Shown: positions 1,658 through 9,935 of the stretch, piece by piece
How positions within the stretch are numbered: the stretch's first letter is position 1
How the letters are laid out: the number at the start of each line of letters is the position of its first letter
Origin: Prasinococcaceae sp. CCMP 1430
Lineage: Eukaryota > Plantae > Prasinodermophyta
DNA length: 11,295 nt
Assembly (NCBI GenBank): GCA_013416795.1
Contig: RQSC01000028.1
Coordinates: 973,869 to 985,163, forward strand
Direction: 5' to 3'
The notes under the pieces: model-generated
Seen by the model: the letters and a program-made list of their open reading frames with translations, nothing else
The model's database searches: none
Told to the model about the DNA's origin: nothing
Made by a program: the position numbers and the translations under genes

Positions 1658-2133
1658 NNNNNNNNNNNNNNNNNNNNNNNNNNNNNNNNNNNNNNNNNNN
1701 NNNNNNNNNNNNNNNNNNNNNNNNNNNNNNNNNNNNNNNNNNNNNNNNNNNNNNNNNNNNNNNNNNNNNNNNNNNNNNNNNNNNNNNNNNNNNNNNNNNN
1801 NNNNNNNNNNNNNNNNNNNNNNNNNNNNNNNNNNNNNNNNNNNNNNNNNNNNNNNNNNNNNNNNNNNNNNNNNNNNNNNNNNNNNNNNNNNNNNNNNNNN
1901 NNNNNNNNNNNNNNNNNNNNNNNNNNNNNNNNNNNNNNNNNNNNNNNNNNNNNNNNNNNNNNNNNNNNNNNNNNNNNNNNNNNNNNNNNNNNNNNNNNNN
2001 NNNNNNNNNNNNNNNNNNNNNNNNNNNNNNNNNNNNNNNNNNNNNNNNNNNNNNNNNNNNNNNNNNNNNNNNNNNNNNNNNNNNNNNNNNNNNNNNNNNN
2101 NNNNNNNNNNNNNNNNNNNNNNNNNNNNNNNNN
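1658..2133. other. Assembly gap (476 N)
   Basis: Run of N. Confidence 1.
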
Positions 2134-2517: not shown

Positions 2518-4092
2518 TCAGGCGGCGTCGTAGTGGTGCAGCCTGTAGAGCAGCGCCCTCCCCCTGGCGTTGCCCACGGCGAAGTACGCGCCGCCGGGCG
2601 AGAACGCGCACGAGTGCACGAACTGCAGCGGCGACCTGCTGGTGGGCCAGTTGGAGAAGACCGTGCGCGTGGGCACGTGCACCAGGCGGAGCGCGTCCTT
2701 CTTCATGCGCGACGCGCACGCGAGCACCGAGCCGTCGGCGCTGAACGCCAGCGTGTCCACCGTGGTGGTGAGGTTCATGAAGCTGCGCGCGGGCGCCGGG
2801 CCCGCGGCGCCGCCCGGGCCGTAGGGGTCCTCGTACAGGTTGACCACGCCCGCCTCGCCGCCCGTGGCGTAGTGCGCCCCGTCGGGCGAGGCCGCCAGCG
2901 CCGTCGCGCCGCTGCTGCCCTCGTCCACCGCGCGCCCCAGCACGCGCCGCGTGCGCAGGTCCCACGTGAGCACCGCGCCGTCGCCGCCCGCCGCCATGAG
3001 CCGCTCGCCGTCCGCCGAGAAGCACAGCGAGCGCGCGGTGCCGCTCATGCGCAGGCTGCCCGCCAACGAGCGCGTCCGCAGGTTGAGCAGGTTGACCACG
3101 CCGCCGCTGCCCAGCGTGGCCATGGTCCGCCCGTCGCGCGAGAGCGCGAAGGTCTCCAGCGACCGGTCAGTCACACCAGCCACCGGCCCCACGCGCTCGG
3201 CCGCCGCCGCCTGCATGTCGTACACGTAGAAGAAGGGGCGGCGGCCTGAGCAGACGACGTGGGTCGAGCCCGCGAACGCCGCGCGCGAGATGGGCATGTC
3301 CTCGAAGTGCACGCCCTGCAGCTTGGGGTTGGAGGCGCCGTCGACGCGGAAGAGGCGCAGCGTGCGGTCGAGGGAGGCGGTGAGGAGGAGGGGGGAGGAC
3401 GGGTGGAACTCCACGGAGCGAAGCACGGCGTCGGCAGGGTCGGCCGCGTTGGCGTCGCGCAGGCGCGTGACCTCCAGGCGGGAGGGCGGCAAAGGAGAAG
3501 GCGTTGTGGACGCCGTGGTGCGGGGGCCGGCGGTGGGCTGGTTGGTGTGGGCGGCGGCGGCGGCCCACGCGGTCGCGCCCGGGTGCATGCGCTCGTACTG
3601 CCGCCGGAGCCGGCGCTCGTACTCGTGGGCGGGCAGGGCGGCCTCGCTTTCGCTCTCGCGGAGCTTGCGCGAGCGCGAGGTGGGGGGGAGGGAGACGAGG
3701 GCGGCGGCGGTTTGATGGGGCTGGTCGGGCTGGTCGGCGTCGTCGATCCATGCGGATGCGGATGCGGGCGGGGTGGGGTGCGGTGAGGAGTCGTCGGGGT
3801 TGTTGTTGTTGGGGGAGTCGTCTGGGCCATCGGAGGCGTTGTTGTTGTTGGGGGAGGAGGCGGCAGTTGTTGGTGATGTTGTAAGGGCGGGGCCGGGCGG
3901 GGTGGGGTGGGGCGGGCCGAAGACGAGCGCGGCGAGCTCGTGCTCCTCGGCGGAGGCGGGGTGTGCGGAGGGGTCGACGGTCTTTGCGGTCTTTTGACGC
4001 TTCTTCTTGCGACGAGGGGCGGAGGCGGCGGGTGATGCTGGTGGTGGTGGTGCGGGGGAGGTGGGGGAGGAGGAGGTGTGTCGTCCCACCAT
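2518..4092 (-). CDS. UTP18: U3 snoRNA-associated protein 18 (WD40, SSU processome), intronless, 524 aa from ATG 4092
   Basis: EEHELAALVFG, SAWIDDAD, RKLRESE...EYERRLRRQYERMHP...WA, RLRDAN, SVEFHP, HFEDMPI, SGRRPFFYVYD, KDALRLVHVPTRTVFSNWP and AVGNARGRALLYRLHHY are all characteristic of UTP18. First in-frame ATG at 4092; the ORF track's start at 4293 is a GTG that is really a splice donor. Confidence 0.92.
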   Translation of the reverse strand: MVGRHTSSSPTSPAPPPPASPAASAPRRKKKRQKTAKTVDPSAHPASAEEHELAALVFGPPHPTPPGPALTTSPTTAASSPNNNNASDGPDDSPNNNNPDDSSPHPTPPASASAWIDDADQPDQPHQTAAALVSLPPTSRSRKLRESESEAALPAHEYERRLRRQYERMHPGATAWAAAAAHTNQPTAGPRTTASTTPSPLPPSRLEVTRLRDANAADPADAVLRSVEFHPSSPLLLTASLDRTLRLFRVDGASNPKLQGVHFEDMPISRAAFAGSTHVVCSGRRPFFYVYDMQAAAAERVGPVAGVTDRSLETFALSRDGRTMATLGSGGVVNLLNLRTRSLAGSLRMSGTARSLCFSADGERLMAAGGDGAVLTWDLRTRRVLGRAVDEGSSGATALAASPDGAHYATGGEAGVVNLYEDPYGPGGAAGPAPARSFMNLTTTVDTLAFSADGSVLACASRMKKDALRLVHVPTRTVFSNWPTSRSPLQFVHSCAFSPGGAYFAVGNARGRALLYRLHHYDAA

Positions 4093-4183: not shown

Positions 4184-4235
4184 CGCGCAGCGCGCGCAGC
4201 GCAGCGCGCGCAGCGCAGCGCGCGCAGCGCAGCGC
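4184..4235. repeat. Tandem repeat, 14-bp unit CGCGCGCAGCGCAG, three exact copies (4191-4232) plus partials
   Basis: Read directly; lies in the intron-like stretch between the AOX exon and UTP18. Confidence 0.9.
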
Positions 4236-4293
4236 CGAGCGCGGGCGGCGCGCGCGCCGTGTCCGGGCCTCCGCCCTCGCCCGGATCGCTCAC

Positions 4294-4776
4294 CTCTCGT
4301 TTTCTGCCTCCTCGAGCAGAGTATGTATCCAGCCGTTGTCGCGTTGCATCAGGCGTAGCGATCGCAGGTGCCTGAGCATTCCCGCCACCATCCCTGGAAC
4401 TCCAGCGATTGTTTCAAGGAAGATCATGCGCTGCAGCCACTTCGACTCGGTCATGTTGGGGCCATACCCTGTGGCCGTGTCGAACGCGAGCCGTACCGTC
4501 GACACGCCGAGGAGCGCAGCGCGCTGCGCGATCGTTGCAGGTGCCTTGTGTGTAATCTGCACAGACGTCAAATCAGACTGGCTGTAGATGGGCTGAAATA
4601 GCCAGTATGTGTTGCCAGCCTCGCTGCGCTTCAGGCCAGGGTGCAGAGCGGGGGGCTTCTCCTCGTCGGACGCGGACGACTCCGCCTGTGGCGCGCTGTC
4701 GCCTGACTCGCTGGTGCTCCAGTTGTCCTCGATGGGGTTCGCCACTGCAGCGTGCGCGGCGCCGAGGCTCGGCTTG
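4294..4776 (-). CDS. AOX: Alternative oxidase exon (N-terminal half of the di-iron domain); downstream exon(s) not visible
   Basis: YWLFQPIYSQSDLTSVQITHKAP...RLAFDTATGYGPNMTESKWLQRMIFLETIAGVPGMVAGMLRHLRSLRLMQRDNGWIHTLLEEAENE(R) has the AOX LET(I/V)AGVPGMV and EEAENER motifs. Ends AG|GTGAGC (donor 4293, phase 2). The 5' boundary is uncertain: acceptors giving starts at 4776 or 4815, with an n at 4782. Confidence 0.9.
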
Positions 4777-5207
4777 CTGGGNGCGGCGGCTGCGCGCTGC
4801 GCGCGCGCGCGGCGGCTGTGCGCGGCGGCTGCTTCACTTTTTTCTTTTTTTTTGTTTGCGCGCGGTGCGTTTTTTTTTTTCTTGGGGGTTGGTATGGGTC
4901 TGCAGCCAGAGTGCGACTGCCCTGTCGGTCGGTCGGGGGTTGTCGCCTTCCGACTGTGTACAGTACCGCTGTATCTACTGTATTGATTCCGTGCACCCCG
5001 GGGTCCGCGCATCATTATCGGGGTGTTCTCCTGGGGGGTTGTGTATGATTTTTCATTTGGGGCTGCGAACAACCGCCTGTTGTTTGAGCCCGGCCGGAGT
5101 GATAATTTATTTTTGGTTTGGCCTGTCCGCATCGGTCGCCGCCCCGTCCGGGCCGGCGAACGTCTGCGCGGCGCGGCACGGCGGACCTCAAATGATCGAC
5201 TCACAAA

Positions 5208-5239
5208 TATAATCGTCAATTTTGGCGCCGCGCCGACAA
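5208..5239 (+). promoter_or_regulatory. TATA-like (TATAAT 5208-5213) and CAA (5237-5239) elements upstream of the tRNA
   Basis: About -39 to -34 and -10 to -8 from the tRNA 5' end, resembling the TATA/CAA arrangement known upstream of plant nuclear tRNA genes. Confidence 0.45.
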
Positions 5240-5246
5240 CTTCGCC

Positions 5247-5360
5247 GGTGCTTTAGCTCAGTTGGGAGAGCGCAAGACTGAAGCCAATATTAGTCATTTA
5301 TCTAGAGATTAGTTTTAATCTCGTCCAGTGAGGTCCCGAGTTCGATCCTCGGAGGCGCCA
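5247..5360 (+). tRNA. tRNA-Phe (GAA) with two predicted introns (5284-5299 at 37/38; 5304-5328 at 41/42)
   Basis: Acceptor stem GGTGCTT/AGGCGCC plus discriminator A; D-arm GCTC-AGTTGGGA-GAGC; anticodon arm CAAGA-CTGAAG|A-TCT|TG; variable AGGTC; T-arm CCGAG-TTCGATC-CTCGG. Intact A box (5254-5265) and B box (5340-5348). Exons 37+4+32 = 73 nt. Identity as tRNA-Phe is firm; the two-intron model is an inference. Confidence 0.9.
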
Positions 5361-5382
5361 GCAGCAATTGCTCACCGCAAAC

Positions 5383-5391
5383 TTTTTTTTT
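5383..5391 (+). terminator. RNA polymerase III terminator (T9)
   Basis: Run of 9 T starting 23 nt after the tRNA discriminator base. Confidence 0.75.
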
Positions 5392-5428
5392 GCGCGCTGG
5401 CGCGCCTGCGCCAGCACATCACGCTCAC

Positions 5429-5637
5429 TGCAACAGTCGTGGACACGTGAGTACGCTGCCGCCGCCGCTGCCTGCAACGCCGCGCGACGCCGCCGGCGCT
5501 GGCTGCCTCAGCGGCGCACCACACTGCCGCCGCAGCGCTGCCGCCAACGCTGCCTGCGACGCCGCNACCAGCTCCCCCCGAACATTCGCTCCAGCACCCC
5601 CTACGTACGCTCCAGCACCCCCCCCTGCTCCATTCAT
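5429..5637 (-). CDS. Candidate first exon of AOX (possible mitochondrial presequence)
   Basis: The ORF reads ...AALAAALRRQCGAPLRQPAPAASRGVAGSGGGSVLTCPRLL, Ala/Arg-rich and acid-poor. It ends CA|GTGAGC (donor 5428, phase 2), compatible with both phase-2 acceptors of the AOX exon. Start uncertain: n at 5566, and the ATG lies inside the repeat cluster. Confidence 0.35.
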
Positions 5638-5842
5638 TTGATGTAAACTTCGGAAAAAAAAATATTCATCGATTCATTCAAAATTATATAAAGGGTCTAC
5701 ATATATGTTCTAATGTGGATCGCGTTTCACAATCCATTCAAATTGGCCTTCGCCCGAAGGGCGAAGGCCATAAACCTCAAACAATCTAACCCAAAGGGGG
5801 TGCTGAGAGCGGTTTCTTGCAGTGGGGGGTGCTGGAACGAAT
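5584..5842. repeat. 259-bp segment bounded by 18-bp inverted repeats (17/18 match), with inner copies of the same motif and an AT-rich core
   Basis: ATTCGCTCCAGCACCCCC (5584-5601) versus GGGGGTGCTGGAACGAAT (5825-5842). Inner copies CGCTCCAGCACCCCC (5608-5622) and GGGGGTGCTGAGAGCG (5796-5811). Confidence 0.75.
5744..5770. repeat. Perfect 12-bp stem, 3-nt loop hairpin
   Basis: TGGCCTTCGCCC-GAA-GGGCGAAGGCCA. Confidence 0.9.
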
Positions 5843-6002
5843 CTGACCCGTTTGTGACCCCCGCTGCCCGCCCCCCAGTCAGCAGAGCACTCGCCGCGGT
5901 TTCGGATTTGGGGGGATGACGCCAGAACAACGAAAACTGCCATACGATGGTATCGTATCGGAGCCTCTCGAGACGAGAGATTCTTGGCTTCGATCGCCCG
6001 TC

Positions 6003-6093
6003 GTGAGCCGGTCGCCACACGTGCACACCCACCCAGCGGGGCGGGCTCCCCCCCACCCCACCCACACACCCACCCACACACACACCCCTCCAG
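6003..6093 (+). other. Probable 91-bp intron just upstream of the sulfotransferase ATG
   Basis: GTGAGC donor, CA-rich body, CCCTCCAG acceptor. Removal joins ATG 5916 (MTPEQRKLPY...RSPV) in frame to HT-M(6100), so 5916-6002 is either a short coding exon or 5' UTR. Confidence 0.55.
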
Positions 6094-6099
6094 CACACA

Positions 6100-7693
6100 A
6101 TGCAACACCCCACGACGACGACGACGACGACGACGACGAGCAACAATCGGAATCTGCTCCCAAGAACAAGAAGAAGAAGACGAAGACGAAGAACGAGAAC
6201 ACGCCCCCCTCCCCGCCCTCTCAAAAAACTCCTCCTCCTCCCCCTCCTCCTGACCCTCACCCCCCCCCTCGCCCTCGCAACCCCCCCTTCTCGCCCCCCC
6301 GCCTCATCCTCATCCCCGCGCAGCAACGACAGCCGCTCCCCCTCATCCGCCCCTACGCCCACGCACCCCCTCCTCCCCGTCCTCCCCCCCGGCCGCCCCC
6401 AAGGGGGCGGCGGCGTCGCGCGCGAGTGCGCCGCGGCGTGGGAGGAGGCGCGCGCGGCGCCAACCCCGCTCCTCGCCTCCCCCCCCCCCACACACACCGT
6501 GCGTGCGCTGCGCCGCCCCCCTCTCGTGGCTGCACGTGCCCAAGTGCGGCACCAGCTTCTACTCGACGCTGCTGCGGTTCGCGTGCCCGCGCATGGCGGA
6601 CGACGTGTACGTGGGCTCGCGGCGCTCCGAGGAGGGCTGCCCCATCAGGGGCGGCTCGATCCCGTGCGCGGCGCGGCTGGTCAACGCCTCGAGCGAGTGC
6701 TGGCGCGCGCCGGTCGCGAACCGCGTCCACCGCGCCATGGGGGCCAAGGTGGGCGCGTACGTGGGCATGTTCCGCGACCCCGCGCGGCGGCTCGCGAGCG
6801 GCCGCGACCACCGGCGGCACAACCTGTACGGCATGAACGCCAGGAACATGAGCGTCGAGGACATGGCCAGGCAGGAGCACGAGCGGGCGCCCAACATGTG
6901 GGGCGTCAACCCGGAGGAGTGCCGCAGCCTGGGCGAGACGCTGCGCGGCGGGTGGGCGGAGCAGCGGGGGCGCGCGGGCGAGCCGGGCGGCGGCGAGCCG
7001 GGCTGGCGCGAGGACCCCGGCGGCCGTCCCGCGGCGGGAGGGATCGGCACGCTGCACTACGCCATGTGCCCCGGCGTGCGCAGCTGCCAGACGCGGATGG
7101 TGCTGGGCGGGTTCGCGCACTCGCCGCAGGCGGGCGACGCGAGGCCGAGCTACCCGCGCCTCGCGCCGAGCCTGACTCGGCACTACCTCCGCCCGGAAAA
7201 CGCGTGCGCCTCGGCGCGCGACCTGGCGCTGCGATGCGACCACCTGCAGCGCGCGCTGGAGCGCGTCGGCCGCATGGCCTTTGTCGGCGTGACCGACCGG
7301 TGGAACCCGAGCGTGTGCCTGTTCCACGCCACCTTCGGCGGCGAGCCGCACCCGACGCAGCTGCGCGCGTACCGCCACCAGAGCCACGACGGCCAGGCGG
7401 ACGTGCTCGACGAGCGCCTGCGCGACGCCGACGGCTGGGACGCGGCGCTGTTCCGCCGCGTGGAGGCGCTCTTCGATGCGCGGCTGAGGCTCTTCGGCAT
7501 CCCCGAGGAGGCCGCGCCGGGCGAGACGTACAGCGCCACCTGCAGCAGGGCGCTGCGCGCGCTCGAGGCGCGCAGGCGGCAGGGGGGGTGCGCGGCGGCC
7601 ATGCCGATGGACGAGGGCGAGAGGAGGGGATCGGACCCGCAGGCCGCGCAGGCCGCGTGCGAGGCCCCACCCTCCGTGCGGGATTTTGACTGA
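6100..7693 (+). CDS. PAPS-dependent sulfotransferase (Golgi type II membrane, Sulfotransfer_2-like); one apparent +1 frameshift in the C11 run at 6479-6489
   Basis: The ORF-track 6503-7693 frame has WLHVPKCGTSF (5'-PSB loop), GMFRDPARRLAS (3'-PB), CQTRMVLG and FVGVTDRWNPSVCLF. The frame from ATG 6100 supplies a basic tail (R8), a hydrophobic anchor LLLLPLLLTLTPPLALA and a Pro/Ser stem, with coding-like GC3 up to the C run. Confidence 0.8.
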
Positions 7694-7928: not shown

Positions 7929-7956
7929 TACCATCATCGGATGGTACTGTACCATC
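7929..7956. repeat. Cluster of three alternating TACCATC/GATGGTAC motifs
   Basis: TACCATC-ATCG-GATGGTAC-T-GTACCATC. Confidence 0.8.
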
Positions 7957-8249
7957 ATGGGACCAGTGTTTTGACCGTGGTGGTTCGTGGATCGTGCTCG
8001 CCCGCGCGCGCCCTGCGCGAACGAAATCGAAATCGCAGTTCCGTTCGAACACACACGCGCGTGCGCGTGCGCGTGCGCGCGGCAGAGCGCGGGCGCGGCC
8101 ACGCGCGGCCAGCGGGGGCGCCCGGCCCTCCCCGCCGGGCCTCCCGTATCCATACAACACACACGCCCCCCACCCAACCCCCCCACCCTCCTCCGAAACA
8201 GCAGCGACGACGGCTCCGCCGGCGAACGGAACCGGAACGGAACGGAGCG

Positions 8250-9935
8250 ATGCCACGCGCGCGCGCGCGACACGAGAGGCCGCCCTCACCACCTCCCTCG
8301 CCTCCCACCCAGACCTCCCCGCCCACCTCCTCCCCCCCGCCAGAAATCCTCACCACGACGACCAACCTCGTCTACCCAAAGGAGCCCCTACAGTCCACCC
8401 GCTGCGAGCTCCCCCCTCCACACGACGACGACCCAGAGCTTCGCCCCAGAGCTTCGCTTCGCCATGGCCCTCCCCCCCAGCAGCAGCGCGAGAACGCCGA
8501 CGAGAGCGAGAACGAGAACGACGGCGACGACGGCGTCGCGGTGCGCGGCGCCGCGGAGCACCTGCGCGCGCGCTCGCGCGCGCTGAGCGCGCGCCTCTTC
8601 CCGGCCTCGACGACCGCCCCCCCTCCGCTCTCCGACCACCATCGCGCGCGCCTCTTCCCGGCCTCGACGACCGCCCCCCCTCCGCGCTCCGACCACCATC
8701 GCGCCCCCACCCAGCCGCCCGCCGTCGAAGACCCCCTCCGCGCCCGCCTCGCGCGCGAGGCCGCGGCGCTCGCGGAGGAGGTGGTGCGCCTGCGCGCGAG
8801 CCTCGCGGCGTCGCAGGCGGACGCGAAGGACGCGCGCCGCGCGCTCCGCGTCGCCCGGGCGCAGCAGGCGCACGCGCAGGGCCCTCCCCACGCGCGCCCC
8901 GCCGCGACACTCCCGCCGCCCCCCCTCTCCGACTCCATCCGACCCCACCAGACCACCGACCACGCCGAATTCGCGATCGCGCGAAAGCTGCTTGAGAGCC
9001 TGATCGCGGGGGCGGGCCCCGCGGCGGCGGCGGCGGCGCCGCCGCCGCCNCTTGGCGGCCCCACGGCTGCCATTGCCAATCGCGAGCTGCGCGCGCTCGC
9101 CCAAGCCGTGCGCGCGTGCGTGGAGGACGCGCGCGCGAGCAGCGTGGGCGGTCGGGTGAGCGGGGCGCATGTTGGGCGGCGCATAAAGCAGGAGCTCTGG
9201 CGCTCGTCGGCGGAGATCACGTCCGACAGCCTGCTGGAGCTCCTGTCGAGCGTCCCCGGTACGGCGGCGGTGAGCTTGCTGTCGCTTTGCCGCGCCCTGG
9301 TCGGGCCAGCCCACTACGAGGTCACCGTTGGCGCGGTCCTCGCCGAAGGTGAACTGGAGGTTGCGTGCACGTTGCTGGACGACTCGGCGCGCGCGGGGCT
9401 GCCGCTCACCCGAGGCGCGTGCGAGGGCGTGCTGCTGGGCTGCGCGGCGCTGCTCGAAGACGACGGAATGAGCAGCAGTGGCGCCGAGCGTCTCATAGGT
9501 TCGGCCTCGACGTGGAATCGGGTGGACGGCCTGCTCGAGCAGGCCGCCCGGCAGGGCATCACGCCGGGCACGAGGGTGTTCAACGCACTCATCAGCGCCG
9601 CGTGCGCGGGCGGCGACACGGGGCGCGCCACGGGCCTTCTCAAGGCCATGCGCGCGTCGGGCGTGCAAGCCGACGGCGGCACGTATGCGCCACTGGTGGG
9701 CCACCTGGTGGCCTCCGGCGCGCTGCGGCGCGCGGCGAGACTGATCGACGCGCTGCGGGCGCGCGCGGGTCCGAGCGCTCTGGCGGGCGCCTACGCAGCG
9801 GCGGTGGCGGCCGCGCCTGAGGCTGAGGTCGCCGCCTTCTTCGAGGAGGCCGCGCGCGCGGACGACTTGGACGCCGCCGCGCTCCTTGAGAAGGCCGCGC
9901 GCGCGGAGGATCACGCCGTATCCGCCGATGTGTAA
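8250..9935 (+). CDS. Pentatricopeptide repeat (PPR) protein with low-complexity and coiled-coil N-terminal half, about 561 aa
   Basis: VFNALISAACAGGDTGRATGLLKAMRASGVQAD and TYAPLVGHLVASGALRRAARLIDAL are PPR motifs, with degenerate ones upstream (HYEVTVGAVLAEGELEVACTLLDDSARAGLPLT). Coiled coil LRARLAREAAALAEEVVRLRASLAASQADAKDARR. ATG 8250 is preferred over 7941; n at 9050. Confidence 0.75.
   Translation: MPRARARHERPPSPPPSPPTQTSPPTSSPPPEILTTTTNLVYPKEPLQSTRCELPPPHDDDPELRPRASLRHGPPPQQQRENADESENENDGDDGVAVRGAAEHLRARSRALSARLFPASTTAPPPLSDHHRARLFPASTTAPPPRSDHHRAPTQPPAVEDPLRARLAREAAALAEEVVRLRASLAASQADAKDARRALRVARAQQAHAQGPPHARPAATLPPPPLSDSIRPHQTTDHAEFAIARKLLESLIAGAGPAAAAAAPPPXLGGPTAAIANRELRALAQAVRACVEDARASSVGGRVSGAHVGRRIKQELWRSSAEITSDSLLELLSSVPGTAAVSLLSLCRALVGPAHYEVTVGAVLAEGELEVACTLLDDSARAGLPLTRGACEGVLLGCAALLEDDGMSSSGAERLIGSASTWNRVDGLLEQAARQGITPGTRVFNALISAACAGGDTGRATGLLKAMRASGVQADGGTYAPLVGHLVASGALRRAARLIDALRARAGPSALAGAYAAAVAAAPEAEVAAFFEEAARADDLDAAALLEKAARAEDHAVSADV
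8587..8704 (+). repeat. 57-bp in-frame tandem duplication (2 copies, 1 substitution)
   Basis: ARLFPASTTAPPPLSDHHR / ARLFPASTTAPPPRSDHHR; period 57 checked on the DNA (8596 vs 8653). Confidence 0.92.

What the first reader, a model, noticed from the sequence alone, without database searches (positions are those of the whole stretch)
5247..5360. tRNA-Phe gene with two introns and a 4-nt micro-exon, including a non-canonical intron at 41/42
Seen: removing one canonical intron cannot restore the anticodon stem, because the 5 nt before the variable loop are CAGTG, which do not pair with CAAGA. Removing 5284-5299 and 5304-5328 gives CAAGA/TCTTG perfectly paired, loop CTGAAGA and a 73-nt tRNA. The second intron has archaeal-type bulge-helix-bulge spacing: 1 nt, a perfect 7-bp hairpin GAGATTA-GTTT-TAATCTC, then 4 nt + 2 nt to the 3' site. 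A box, B box, TATA-like element and T9 terminator are intact. Established: most eukaryotic tRNA introns lie only at 37/38; multiple and ectopic BHB introns are known in archaea and a few algae such as Cyanidioschyzon merolae. Inference: a functional multi-intron tRNA implying a relaxed-specificity TSEN endonuclease in this lineage.
Basis: partly seen in the sequence, partly recalled or inferred. Interest (0 to 1): 0.8.

Follow-up and report, generated by a model that had tools for sequence, protein, structure and literature searches.

The report
Twice-split phenylalanine tRNA gene, green alga
The alga Prasinoderma coloniale has a phenylalanine tRNA gene interrupted twice within 45 bases, once at the usual spot and once inside the anticodon stem, a layout so far proven only in red algae and archaea; here the splicing is predicted, not shown.

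Summary
Window 5247-5360 (+) is a tRNA gene that standard tools miss. Removing 5284-5299 and 5304-5328 gives a clean 73-nt tRNA-Phe(GAA).

- **Identity:** all arms, the invariant bases and the PheRS identity bases are intact. Rfam's tRNA model scores the unspliced locus at 39.6 bits (cut-off 29) once the filters are relaxed.
- **Organism:** Prasinoderma coloniale. The neighbouring AOX exon is 100% identical to PRCOL_00001655.
- **Intron 1:** an ordinary 37/38 intron.
- **Intron 2 (41/42):** it has a perfect 7-bp hairpin in exact bulge-helix-bulge register (about 0.2% of composition-matched shuffles). Its central helix is weak, 2 of 4 pairs in the primary transcript and 3 of 4 once intron 1 is gone. 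Removing intron 1 also allows an outer helix (30-33/45-48).
- **Order of splicing:** the two motifs share A38/U39 and the exon between them is 4 nt. Splicing must therefore be sequential, probably intron 1 first.

Not shown:
- No RNA data covers the locus.
- No relative's copy could be fetched.
- A rival junction, ATTT at 5296-5299, cannot be excluded.

This scan has already noted similar interrupted tRNA genes elsewhere in this genome. I did not test those notes. I found no paper describing this for any green-lineage nuclear genome. Verdict: probably a real two-intron gene, a new member of the kind known from red algae.

The parts
5205..5213 (+). TATA-like element AAATATAAT, 34-42 nt upstream of tRNA position 1
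   Evidence: Read directly. It lies in a local low-GC island of a genome that is about 70% GC. Its role as an upstream pol III element is inferred by analogy with plant and C. merolae tRNA genes (PMC3728597).
5247..5283 (+). Exon 1: tRNA positions 1-37 (acceptor 5' strand, D arm with A box 5254-5265, anticodon stem 5' strand CAAGA, loop CTGAAG with anticodon GAA)
   Evidence: ARAGORN on the spliced forms. Rfam RF00005 alignment.
5284..5299 (+). Intron 1, 16 nt, canonical position 37/38, 25% GC
   Evidence: ARAGORN calls it as a 37/38 intron once intron 2 is removed. The relaxed hBH motif has H 3 of 4 pairs and h 3 bp, rising to 5 bp after intron 2 removal.
5300..5303 (+). Micro-exon ATCT: tRNA positions 38-41
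   Evidence: It is required to complete the anticodon loop and stem. The junctions are unambiguous for this mature sequence. The competing parse ATTT at 5296-5299 is not excluded.
5304..5328 (+). Intron 2, 25 nt, inside the anticodon stem between positions 41 and 42, 36% GC
Evidence: Removing it restores the CAAGA/TCTTG stem.
5305..5322 (+). Perfect 7-bp hairpin (loop GTTT) acting as the inner helix h' of the intron 2 splice motif
   Evidence: It appears in the minimum-energy folds and contributes -7.4 kcal/mol. It lies in exact BHB register, shuffle frequency 0.002. The sequence is unique in the window.
5329..5360 (+). Exon 3: tRNA positions 42-73 (TG of the anticodon stem, variable loop AGGTC, T arm with B box 5339-5349, acceptor 3' strand, discriminator A)
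   Evidence: ARAGORN. Rfam alignment.
5383..5391 (+). T9 run, probable pol III terminator, 22 nt after the discriminator base

Best explanation
This is a functional nuclear gene for cytosolic tRNA-Phe(GAA) of Prasinoderma coloniale. RNA polymerase III transcribes it as one precursor. The signals are the internal A and B boxes, an upstream TATA-like element and a T9 terminator.

The precursor carries two protein-spliced introns only 4 nt apart:
- a 16-nt intron at the canonical 37/38 site;
- a 25-nt intron inside the anticodon stem at 41/42.

Maturation is inferred, not shown. The tRNA splicing endonuclease would cut at 3-nt bulges flanking short helices (relaxed bulge-helix-bulge motifs), and a tRNA ligase would join the exons.

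The two motifs both use A38 and U39, and the exon between them is only AUCU. They therefore cannot be cut at the same time without losing the tetranucleotide. One intron must be cut out and the ends ligated before the other is cut.

The most likely order is intron 1 first. The intermediate then refolds so that nucleotides 30-39 pair with the 3' end of intron 2 and with variable-loop bases 43-48. That places both intron 2 splice sites in 3-nt bulges next to the 7-bp hairpin. Removing intron 2 lets the normal anticodon stem form.
For: - **Shown, the product:** the doubly spliced product is a perfect 73-nt tRNA-Phe(GAA) with 7/4/5/5 stems and the invariant bases. It also has G20, G34-A35-A36 and A73, the PheRS identity set (my own knowledge), and G37, which is typical of cytosolic tRNA-Phe.
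- **Shown, the model score:** the unspliced locus reaches 39.6 bits on Rfam tRNA.
- **Shown, no simpler solution:** no single-intron solution exists.
- **Shown, intron 2 geometry:** h' has 7 of 7 pairs in exact register, with bulges CT|A and AG|T. Shuffles reach this in 0.2% of trials.
- **Shown, effect of removing intron 1:** the central helix improves from 2 of 4 to 3 of 4 pairs, and an outer helix 30-33/45-48 across a tandem G-A loop becomes possible. That conformer scores -30.5 kcal/mol, against -28.0 with the hairpin only and -24.2 for a cloverleaf with the intron as a bulge. In the primary transcript the intron 2 motif costs +3.7 and the intron 1 motif +1.2.
- **Shown, the anticodon arm is natural:** the predicted mature anticodon arm is identical to that of 101 intronless and 18 single-intron natural tRNA-Phe genes in metagenomes.
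- **Shown, the DNA is real:** the sequence is identical in independently assembled contigs.
- **Weak, copy number:** in run X1 the depth over 5058-5451 equals that of the single contig covering it. No second copy at 90% likeness or more, and no intronless joined form, was laid.
- **Context:** ordered BHB splicing of multi-intron nuclear tRNAs is experimentally established in C. merolae (PMC3728597) and Chondrus crispus (10.1101/2021.12.21.473619).
- **Leads only:** scan notes report many other interrupted tRNA genes in this genome, including two more 41/42 introns.
Against: - No RNA evidence exists. The two RNA-type contig sets (X23, X24) cover the neighbouring AOX exon but nothing between 4861 and 6240. 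They are contigs, so they would be expected to miss a tRNA.
- The central helix of both motifs is imperfect, 3 of 4 pairs at best, and position 32 does not pair with the intron in this parse.
- In C. merolae the 37/38 intron is removed last (PMC3728597), the opposite of the order proposed here.
- No orthologous copy from a relative could be obtained, so there is no conservation or covariation evidence.
- The single-copy argument is weak.
Confidence: 0.7

Rival explanations
1. The gene is functional and has two introns, but with different junctions. Intron 1 is 5284-5295 (12 nt), the micro-exon is ATTT (5296-5299) and intron 2 is 5300-5328 (29 nt). The mature tRNA then reads ...GAAGAUUUUG..., with a G30-U40 wobble pair.
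For: In this parse intron 1 has a full 4 of 4 central helix. It includes a pair between position 32 and the intron base 3 nt upstream of the 3' splice site, the classical anticodon-intron pair of eukaryotic pre-tRNAs, followed by a 3-nt bulge TC|A. The same pairing is part of the minimum-energy fold of the primary transcript, helix 30-35 with 5290-5295.
Against: - The 5' site of intron 2 would then lie 5 nt, not 1 nt, from the hairpin, so the in-register h' is lost.
- The anticodon stem would carry G30-U40, whereas A29-U41 including G30-C40 is invariant in yeast and human tRNA-Phe (my own knowledge).
- The ATCT version is the arm found in 119 natural genes, although that scan required ATCT and so is not an unbiased count.
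Confidence: 0.13
2. The locus is a dead gene. It was an ordinary tRNA-Phe gene with a 37/38 intron and was recently disabled by a 25-bp palindrome-containing insertion, such as a repair or transposon footprint. Functional tRNA-Phe is encoded elsewhere.
For: - Any insertion leaves the flanking exons intact, so intact exons alone do not prove function.
- The first 3 nt of the insert (AGA) are the reverse complement of the last 3 exon nt (TCT), giving the palindrome TCTAGA centred on the junction. The insert also repeats the ATCT of the micro-exon.
- A multi-copy MITE-like element lies 220 nt downstream. Scan notes report active mariner elements nearby.
- No RNA cover exists.
Against: - The hairpin offset (1 nt and 6 nt) is the one BHB-compatible offset out of about 8 possible, and the 4 nt after it pair 3 of 4 with the spliced exon.
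- There is no decay anywhere in 73 exon positions, the promoter elements or the terminator.
- No second copy at 90% likeness or more appeared in the whole-genome contigs of run X1 (weak).
- The insert sequence is unique in the window.
- The same genome is reported to hold many tRNA genes with such inserts, including essential isoacceptors (untested).
Confidence: 0.12
3. Only intron 1 is removed. The product is an odd long-arm tRNA in which TCTAG forms the 3' anticodon stem and the hairpin serves as an extra variable arm.
For: After intron 1 removal, TCTAG pairs with CAAGA at 4 of 5 positions and the hairpin lies immediately 3' of it. ARAGORN proposes comparable long-arm solutions.
Against: This needs an A28xA42 mismatch. 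It also leaves 14 unpaired nt between the arm and the T stem, a geometry unlike any class II tRNA. No tRNA-Phe with a long arm is known (my own knowledge).
Confidence: 0.02

Closest known systems
[quoted passage not shown] 2013, PMC3728597), including its two-intron tRNA-Phe(GAA)
   Same: - It is a nuclear tRNA gene with more than one protein-spliced intron, one of them outside 37/38.
- The exon-intron junctions carry relaxed or strict BHB motifs.
- It has an upstream TATA-like element and a T-stretch.
- Processing is ordered, and the 37/38 motif is weak (C. merolae tRNA-Phe has no H helix there).
   Different: - The lineage is different: Prasinodermophyta, in the green lineage.
- The ectopic intron lies in the anticodon stem (41/42). 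That position is not among those listed for C. merolae (D-stem, D-loop, variable arm, T-stem, T-loop).
- The two introns are 4 nt apart and their motifs overlap. C. merolae introns fold independently and are stated not to be nested.
- The inferred order here, 37/38 first, is the reverse of C. merolae.
- Splicing is proven there and not here.
Non-canonical tRNA introns of Chondrus crispus (PlantRNA 2.0, 10.1101/2021.12.21.473619) and of the Guillardia theta nucleomorph (cited in PMC13578239)
   Same: Eukaryotic tRNA genes that standard finders call pseudogenes or miss, and that are rescued by removing a second intron. In C. crispus some genes combine a canonical and an ectopic intron.
   Different: In C. 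crispus the ectopic introns sit at two fixed loop positions (20/21 and 58/59), not in a stem and not next to the canonical intron. Both lineages are red-algal.
Archaeal multi-intron and nested-intron tRNA genes (Thermoproteales and others; reviewed in PMC4033280, PMC4090602)
   Same: Introns occur in stems and at many positions, exons can be very short, and in some cases the last BHB forms only after another intron has been removed (as stated in PMC3728597).
   Different: Those are cut by archaeal EndA-type enzymes. This locus is in a eukaryotic nucleus with pol III signals, and its BHB is more relaxed than the strict archaeal hBHBh' motif.
Permuted and long-intron tRNA genes of prasinophyte green algae (Ostreococcus, Micromonas; Maruyama et al. 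2010, cited in PMC13578239)
   Same: They are the only atypical nuclear tRNA gene architecture so far described in the green lineage. They are also thought to depend on BHB processing.
   Different: Those genes are circularly permuted or carry long canonical introns. Neither the 2026 review nor PlantRNA 2.0 reports an intron at a non-canonical position for any green alga.

Membership tests
Cytosolic tRNA-Phe(GAA) | Cloverleaf with 7/4/5/5-bp stems, a 7-nt anticodon loop and anticodon GAA | tested here: met
   ARAGORN on the doubly spliced 73-mer. Met only after both inserts are removed.
Cytosolic tRNA-Phe(GAA) | Score above the curated threshold on a general tRNA covariance model | tested here: met
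   RF00005 scores 39.6 bits against a gathering score of 29 on the unspliced locus, with permissive filters. It was missed with default filters.
Cytosolic tRNA-Phe(GAA) | PheRS identity bases G20, G34, A35, A36 and A73, plus G37 (the wybutosine site) | tested here: met
   Read directly. The identity set itself is from my own knowledge.
Cytosolic tRNA-Phe(GAA) | Mature, aminoacylatable RNA present in the cell | not testable with these tools
   The only RNA contig sets have no cover at 4861-6240.
BHB-mediated disrupted nuclear tRNA genes (C. merolae type) | An intervening sequence outside 37/38 whose removal restores the cloverleaf | tested here: met
   Intron 2 lies at 41/42.
BHB-mediated disrupted nuclear tRNA genes (C. 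merolae type) | A BHB or relaxed BHB motif at each exon-intron junction | tested here: inconclusive
   For intron 2, h' has 7 of 7 pairs in exact register and both bulges are correctly spaced. H has 2 of 4 pairs in the primary transcript and 3 of 4 after intron 1 removal. The outer helix exists only across a tandem G-A loop. Intron 1 has H 3 of 4 and h 3 bp. These are comparable to the relaxed and 'no H' motifs accepted in C. merolae.
BHB-mediated disrupted nuclear tRNA genes (C. merolae type) | Spliced product and processing intermediates detected by RT-PCR, northern blot or sequencing | not testable with these tools
   No RNA cover.
BHB-mediated disrupted nuclear tRNA genes (C. merolae type) | A genome-wide phenomenon affecting many tRNA genes | not tested
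   Only unchecked scan notes are available. The rest of the genome could not be reached with the tools.
Canonical eukaryotic 37/38 tRNA intron (for intron 1) | Position 37/38 with the 3' splice site in a 3-nt bulge | tested here: met
Canonical eukaryotic 37/38 tRNA intron (for intron 1) | Anticodon-intron pair between position 32 and the intron base 3 nt upstream of the 3' site | tested here: not met
   In the ATCT parse this is the mismatch C32xT5297. It is met (C32-G5293) only in the ATTT parse.
Nested (interdependent) tRNA introns, archaeal type | One intron's splice motif forms only after another intron has been removed | tested here: inconclusive
   In silico only. The intron 2 motif goes from +3.7 kcal/mol in the primary transcript to -2.5 kcal/mol after intron 1 removal, both relative to the hairpin alone. 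The two motifs share A38 and U39.

The most novel reading that the evidence does not exclude
Prasinoderma coloniale, from the third and earliest-branching phylum of green plants, may mature its only cytosolic tRNA-Phe through obligatorily ordered splicing of two overlapping BHB-type introns around a 4-nt exon. This would be one example of a genome-wide set of ectopic tRNA introns. It would be the first such system in the green lineage and the first interdependent (nested) tRNA introns in any eukaryote. It would suggest that position-independent, BHB-guided tRNA splicing was present in the common ancestor of red and green algae rather than being a red-algal oddity.
Probability: 0.45. Interest if true: 0.75.

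Novelty: new member of a known kind. Interest (0 to 1): 0.6.

Why it matters
**Significance.** Eukaryotic tRNA splicing is textbook-restricted to position 37/38, because the endonuclease measures from the mature body of the tRNA. Proven exceptions come only from red algae and a red-derived nucleomorph.

A spliced 41/42 intron in Prasinoderma would extend position-independent tRNA splicing to the green lineage. It would bear on two questions:
- whether this ability is ancestral to Archaeplastida;
- whether the endonuclease of the green lineage, modelled as archaeal-like (alpha-beta)2 in Arabidopsis (PMC13728533), can recognise BHB motifs wherever they occur.

**Practical point.** Standard tRNA finders miss this gene. 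The tRNA set of this genome is therefore probably under-annotated, as the C. merolae set was before BHB-aware searches.

**As a test system.** The 4-nt exon and the overlapping motifs make this locus a compact test case for ordered splicing.

Tried and rejected
- **Single-intron and other parses.** No single-intron solution pairs the anticodon stem. Using the second ATCT (5318-5321) as the micro-exon gives a 7-nt intron with no possible inner helix and 1 of 4 H pairs, so I rejected it.
- **RNA evidence.** The RNA-type sets cover the AOX exon (4294-4786, with a spliced end at 4294) but not the tRNA.
- **Relatives, by metagenome scan.**
  - A scan for the anticodon arm with two variable gaps returned 118 loci, none with two introns and none from this species.
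  - The most similar GC-rich hit (L045) is from an unidentified green alga. Its MSH7-like protein is at most 49% identical to its best hits other than its own metagenome copy, and at most 47% to any named protein. It is therefore no close comparison.
- **Relatives, by neighbouring gene.**
  - A TARA contig 97.9% identical to the AOX exon stops short of the tRNA.
  - The exact AOX protein is not on record for contig look-up.
  - Six ORFs around the tRNA are not in the protein collection.
- **Other hidden tRNAs in the window.** A B-box scan gave only chance-level hits.
- **Insert as a repeat.** The hairpin sequence is unique in the window.
- **Assembly artefact.** Rejected, because the DNA contig is identical.
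- **Endonuclease subunits of this alga.** I could not look for them.

Full report
**Observation.**
- Default ARAGORN and default Rfam find no RNA gene anywhere in the window.
- When only 5150-5450 is searched with permissive filters, the Rfam tRNA model matches exactly 5247-5360 over its full length. The score is 39.6 bits against a gathering score of 29 (E 3.3e-7). The acceptor, D and T arms are aligned and only the anticodon stem is marked as unpaired.
- Removing 5284-5299 and 5304-5328 gives a 73-nt sequence that ARAGORN calls tRNA-Phe(GAA) with a standard cloverleaf.
- Removing only 5304-5328 gives tRNA-Phe with a 16-nt intron at 37/38.
- On the raw locus ARAGORN in intron mode proposes only a badly paired tRNA-Ile.
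- The five bases before the variable loop pair with the 5' stem strand at only 2 of 5 positions, so no single excision restores the stem.

**Organism and context.**
- The window averages about 70% GC, with third codon positions near 100% GC in coding parts. The tRNA sits in a lower-GC intergenic island.
- On the minus strand an alternative oxidase exon lies just left of the tRNA (Pfam AOX, E 1.4e-37).
- Its translation is 100% identical to EukProt entry PRCOL_00001655. This identifies the genome as Prasinoderma coloniale. The published GC content of 69.8% agrees (PMC7455551).
- RNA-type contigs cover the AOX exon 4294-4786 and continue into unrelated sequence at 4294, as expected at a splice site.
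- The tRNA is transcribed divergently from AOX.
- Upstream there is AAATATAAT at 5205-5213. Downstream, a T9 run at 5383-5391 lies 22 nt after the discriminator base. It is one of only five A or T runs of 7 or more in the window.

**Anatomy of the two inserts.** I scored each proposed intron against the bulge-helix-bulge scheme: outer helix h, 3-nt bulge, 4-bp helix H, 3-nt bulge, inner helix h', with cuts after the second base of each bulge.
- Intron 1 (37/38) has H at 3 of 4 pairs. Its h is 3 bp, using the micro-exon, and becomes 5 bp once intron 2 is gone. It has almost no h'. This is the usual relaxed eukaryotic form, although position 32 is unpaired.
- Intron 2 (41/42) has a perfect 7-bp h' that starts exactly at the second intron base and ends exactly 6 nt before the 3' junction. 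Both splice sites therefore fall in correctly spaced bulges, CT|A and AG|T.
- Composition-matched shuffles of the 25-mer give 7 in-register pairs in 0.2% of two million trials.
- The central helix of intron 2 is weak, at 2 of 4 pairs in the primary transcript.
- After intron 1 is removed, G37 comes next to A38 and the helix becomes 3 of 4. Bases 30-33 can then pair with variable-loop bases 45-48 across a tandem G-A loop, giving a near-complete hBHBh' motif.

**Energies.**
- The hairpin alone contributes -7.4 kcal/mol.
- In the primary transcript, forming the intron 2 motif costs +3.7 and forming the intron 1 motif costs +1.2, relative to the hairpin-only state.
- After intron 1 removal the full intron 2 conformer scores -30.5. 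The hairpin-only state scores -28.0. A cloverleaf with the intron as a bulge scores -24.2. The constrained minimum, -32.5, contains the same outer helix.
- These values are marginal. They are comparable to those reported for accepted C. merolae motifs, where the tRNA-Phe 37/38 motif is +1.15 kcal/mol (PMC3728597).

**Mechanism (inferred).**
- A38 and U39 belong to the bulge and outer helix of the intron 1 motif and also to the central helix of the intron 2 motif. The two motifs are therefore mutually exclusive folds.
- The exon between them is four bases. If all four sites were cut together, the tetranucleotide would be lost.
- Splicing therefore has to be sequential: cut and ligate one intron, refold, then cut and ligate the other.
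- The register and energy results favour intron 1 first. This is the reverse of C. merolae, where the anticodon-arm intron is always last, so I give the order only moderate weight.

**Ambiguity of the mature sequence.**
- The DNA reads ATTTATCT at 5296-5303. If ATTT rather than ATCT is the micro-exon, intron 1 (then 5284-5295) has a 4 of 4 central helix that includes the classical pair between position 32 and the intron.
- Against that parse, the 5' site of intron 2 would be 5 nt from the hairpin and the stem would carry G30-U40.
- The ATCT version reproduces A29 to U41, which is identical in yeast and human tRNA-Phe (my own knowledge). It also reproduces exactly the arm found in 119 natural genes, although that scan required ATCT.

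**Expression, copy number and relatives.**
- No RNA contig covers 4861-6240. Because these are assembled contigs, this says nothing either way.
- A DNA contig of run X1 covers 4882-5565 without a difference.
- The summed depth over 5058-5451 equals that contig's depth alone. No other contig of that whole-genome run was laid on the tRNA at 90% likeness, and no intron-less joined form appeared. This is weak evidence that the locus has no near-identical paralogue, because the tool filters some records.
- The metagenome scan found no two-intron relative.
- Other attempts to reach a relative's copy failed.

**What is known.**
- Ectopic and multiple nuclear tRNA introns with BHB motifs are experimentally established in C. 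merolae (PMC3728597) and Chondrus crispus (10.1101/2021.12.21.473619). They are also described for the Guillardia nucleomorph.
- The P. coloniale genome paper does not treat nuclear tRNA genes.
- Four further literature searches found nothing on them.

**Earlier scan notes.**
- This scan has already recorded many interrupted tRNA genes elsewhere in the same genome. They include Ile, Glu, Pro, Val, Met, Arg, His and Lys, two more 41/42 introns and a 5-nt micro-exon.
- One note on this same stretch says that the second motif forms only after the first intron is removed. I re-derived that point independently.
- I could not test the other notes, and I use them only as leads.

**Verdict.** The best explanation is a real, functional two-intron tRNA-Phe gene (confidence 0.7) with sequential BHB-type splicing. 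It is a new member, in a new lineage, of the class known from red algae. Three features are unusual for a eukaryote: the anticodon-stem position, the 4-nt exon and the overlapping motifs. The main rivals are the alternative micro-exon (0.13) and a gene disabled by a recent insertion (0.12). RNA evidence is the missing piece.

Noticed in passing
window 5584-5842: An element of about 260 bp with 21-nt terminal inverted repeats (90% complementary) and an AT-rich interior lies 220 nt downstream of the tRNA. In the whole-genome contigs its depth is about 8 times the single-copy level, and variant letters appear at 5603-5630. It looks like a multi-copy MITE.
   Followed up: partly
window 4293-5015 (- strand): This is an exon of the alternative oxidase gene PRCOL_00001655, the first exon if translation starts where proposed below. 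It is transcribed divergently from the tRNA. RNA contigs confirm the exon end at 4294. A possible start is the Met at 5015, upstream of a Lys-rich, A-rich tract (4845-4880 on the + strand). An ambiguous base near 4783 breaks all contigs there.
   Followed up: partly
L119 (TARA metagenome scaffold, 890 nt): This ocean metagenome contig is 97.9% identical to window 4208-4786, and its protein is 98% identical. Its first 311 nt do not align with the window upstream of 4786. A close relative or strain of P. coloniale with a different AOX 5' region therefore occurs in TARA samples.
   Followed up: partly
L045:1238-1339 (- strand) and the whole 4.9-kb locus: This marine metagenome contig comes from an unidentified, extremely GC-rich green alga (72% GC, third codon positions near 100%). 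It carries a tRNA-Phe(GAA) with the same anticodon arm and a single AT-rich 29-nt intron at 37/38. The gene lies between a TET/JBP-like oxygenase gene and an MSH7-like gene. The MSH7-like protein is 47-49% identical to its best hits other than its own metagenome copy, and 47% to the best named ones, trebouxiophyte proteins.
   Followed up: partly
window 1658-2133 and 5566: There is an assembly gap of 476 N, and a single ambiguous base at 5566.
   Followed up: no
window 2518-3423 (-), 6503-7693 (+), 7941-9935 (+): Three further coding regions stand out by third-position GC near 100%. One is a WD40 beta-propeller gene. One is an ORF with no Pfam match. One is a 664-aa ORF with weak PPR-repeat matches.
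   Followed up: no
window 5296-5309: ATTTATCT is a near-tandem repeat of ATYT at the 3' end of intron 1. TCTAGA is a perfect palindrome centred exactly on the junction between the micro-exon and intron 2. Both may be traces of how the second intron arose or slid.
   Followed up: no
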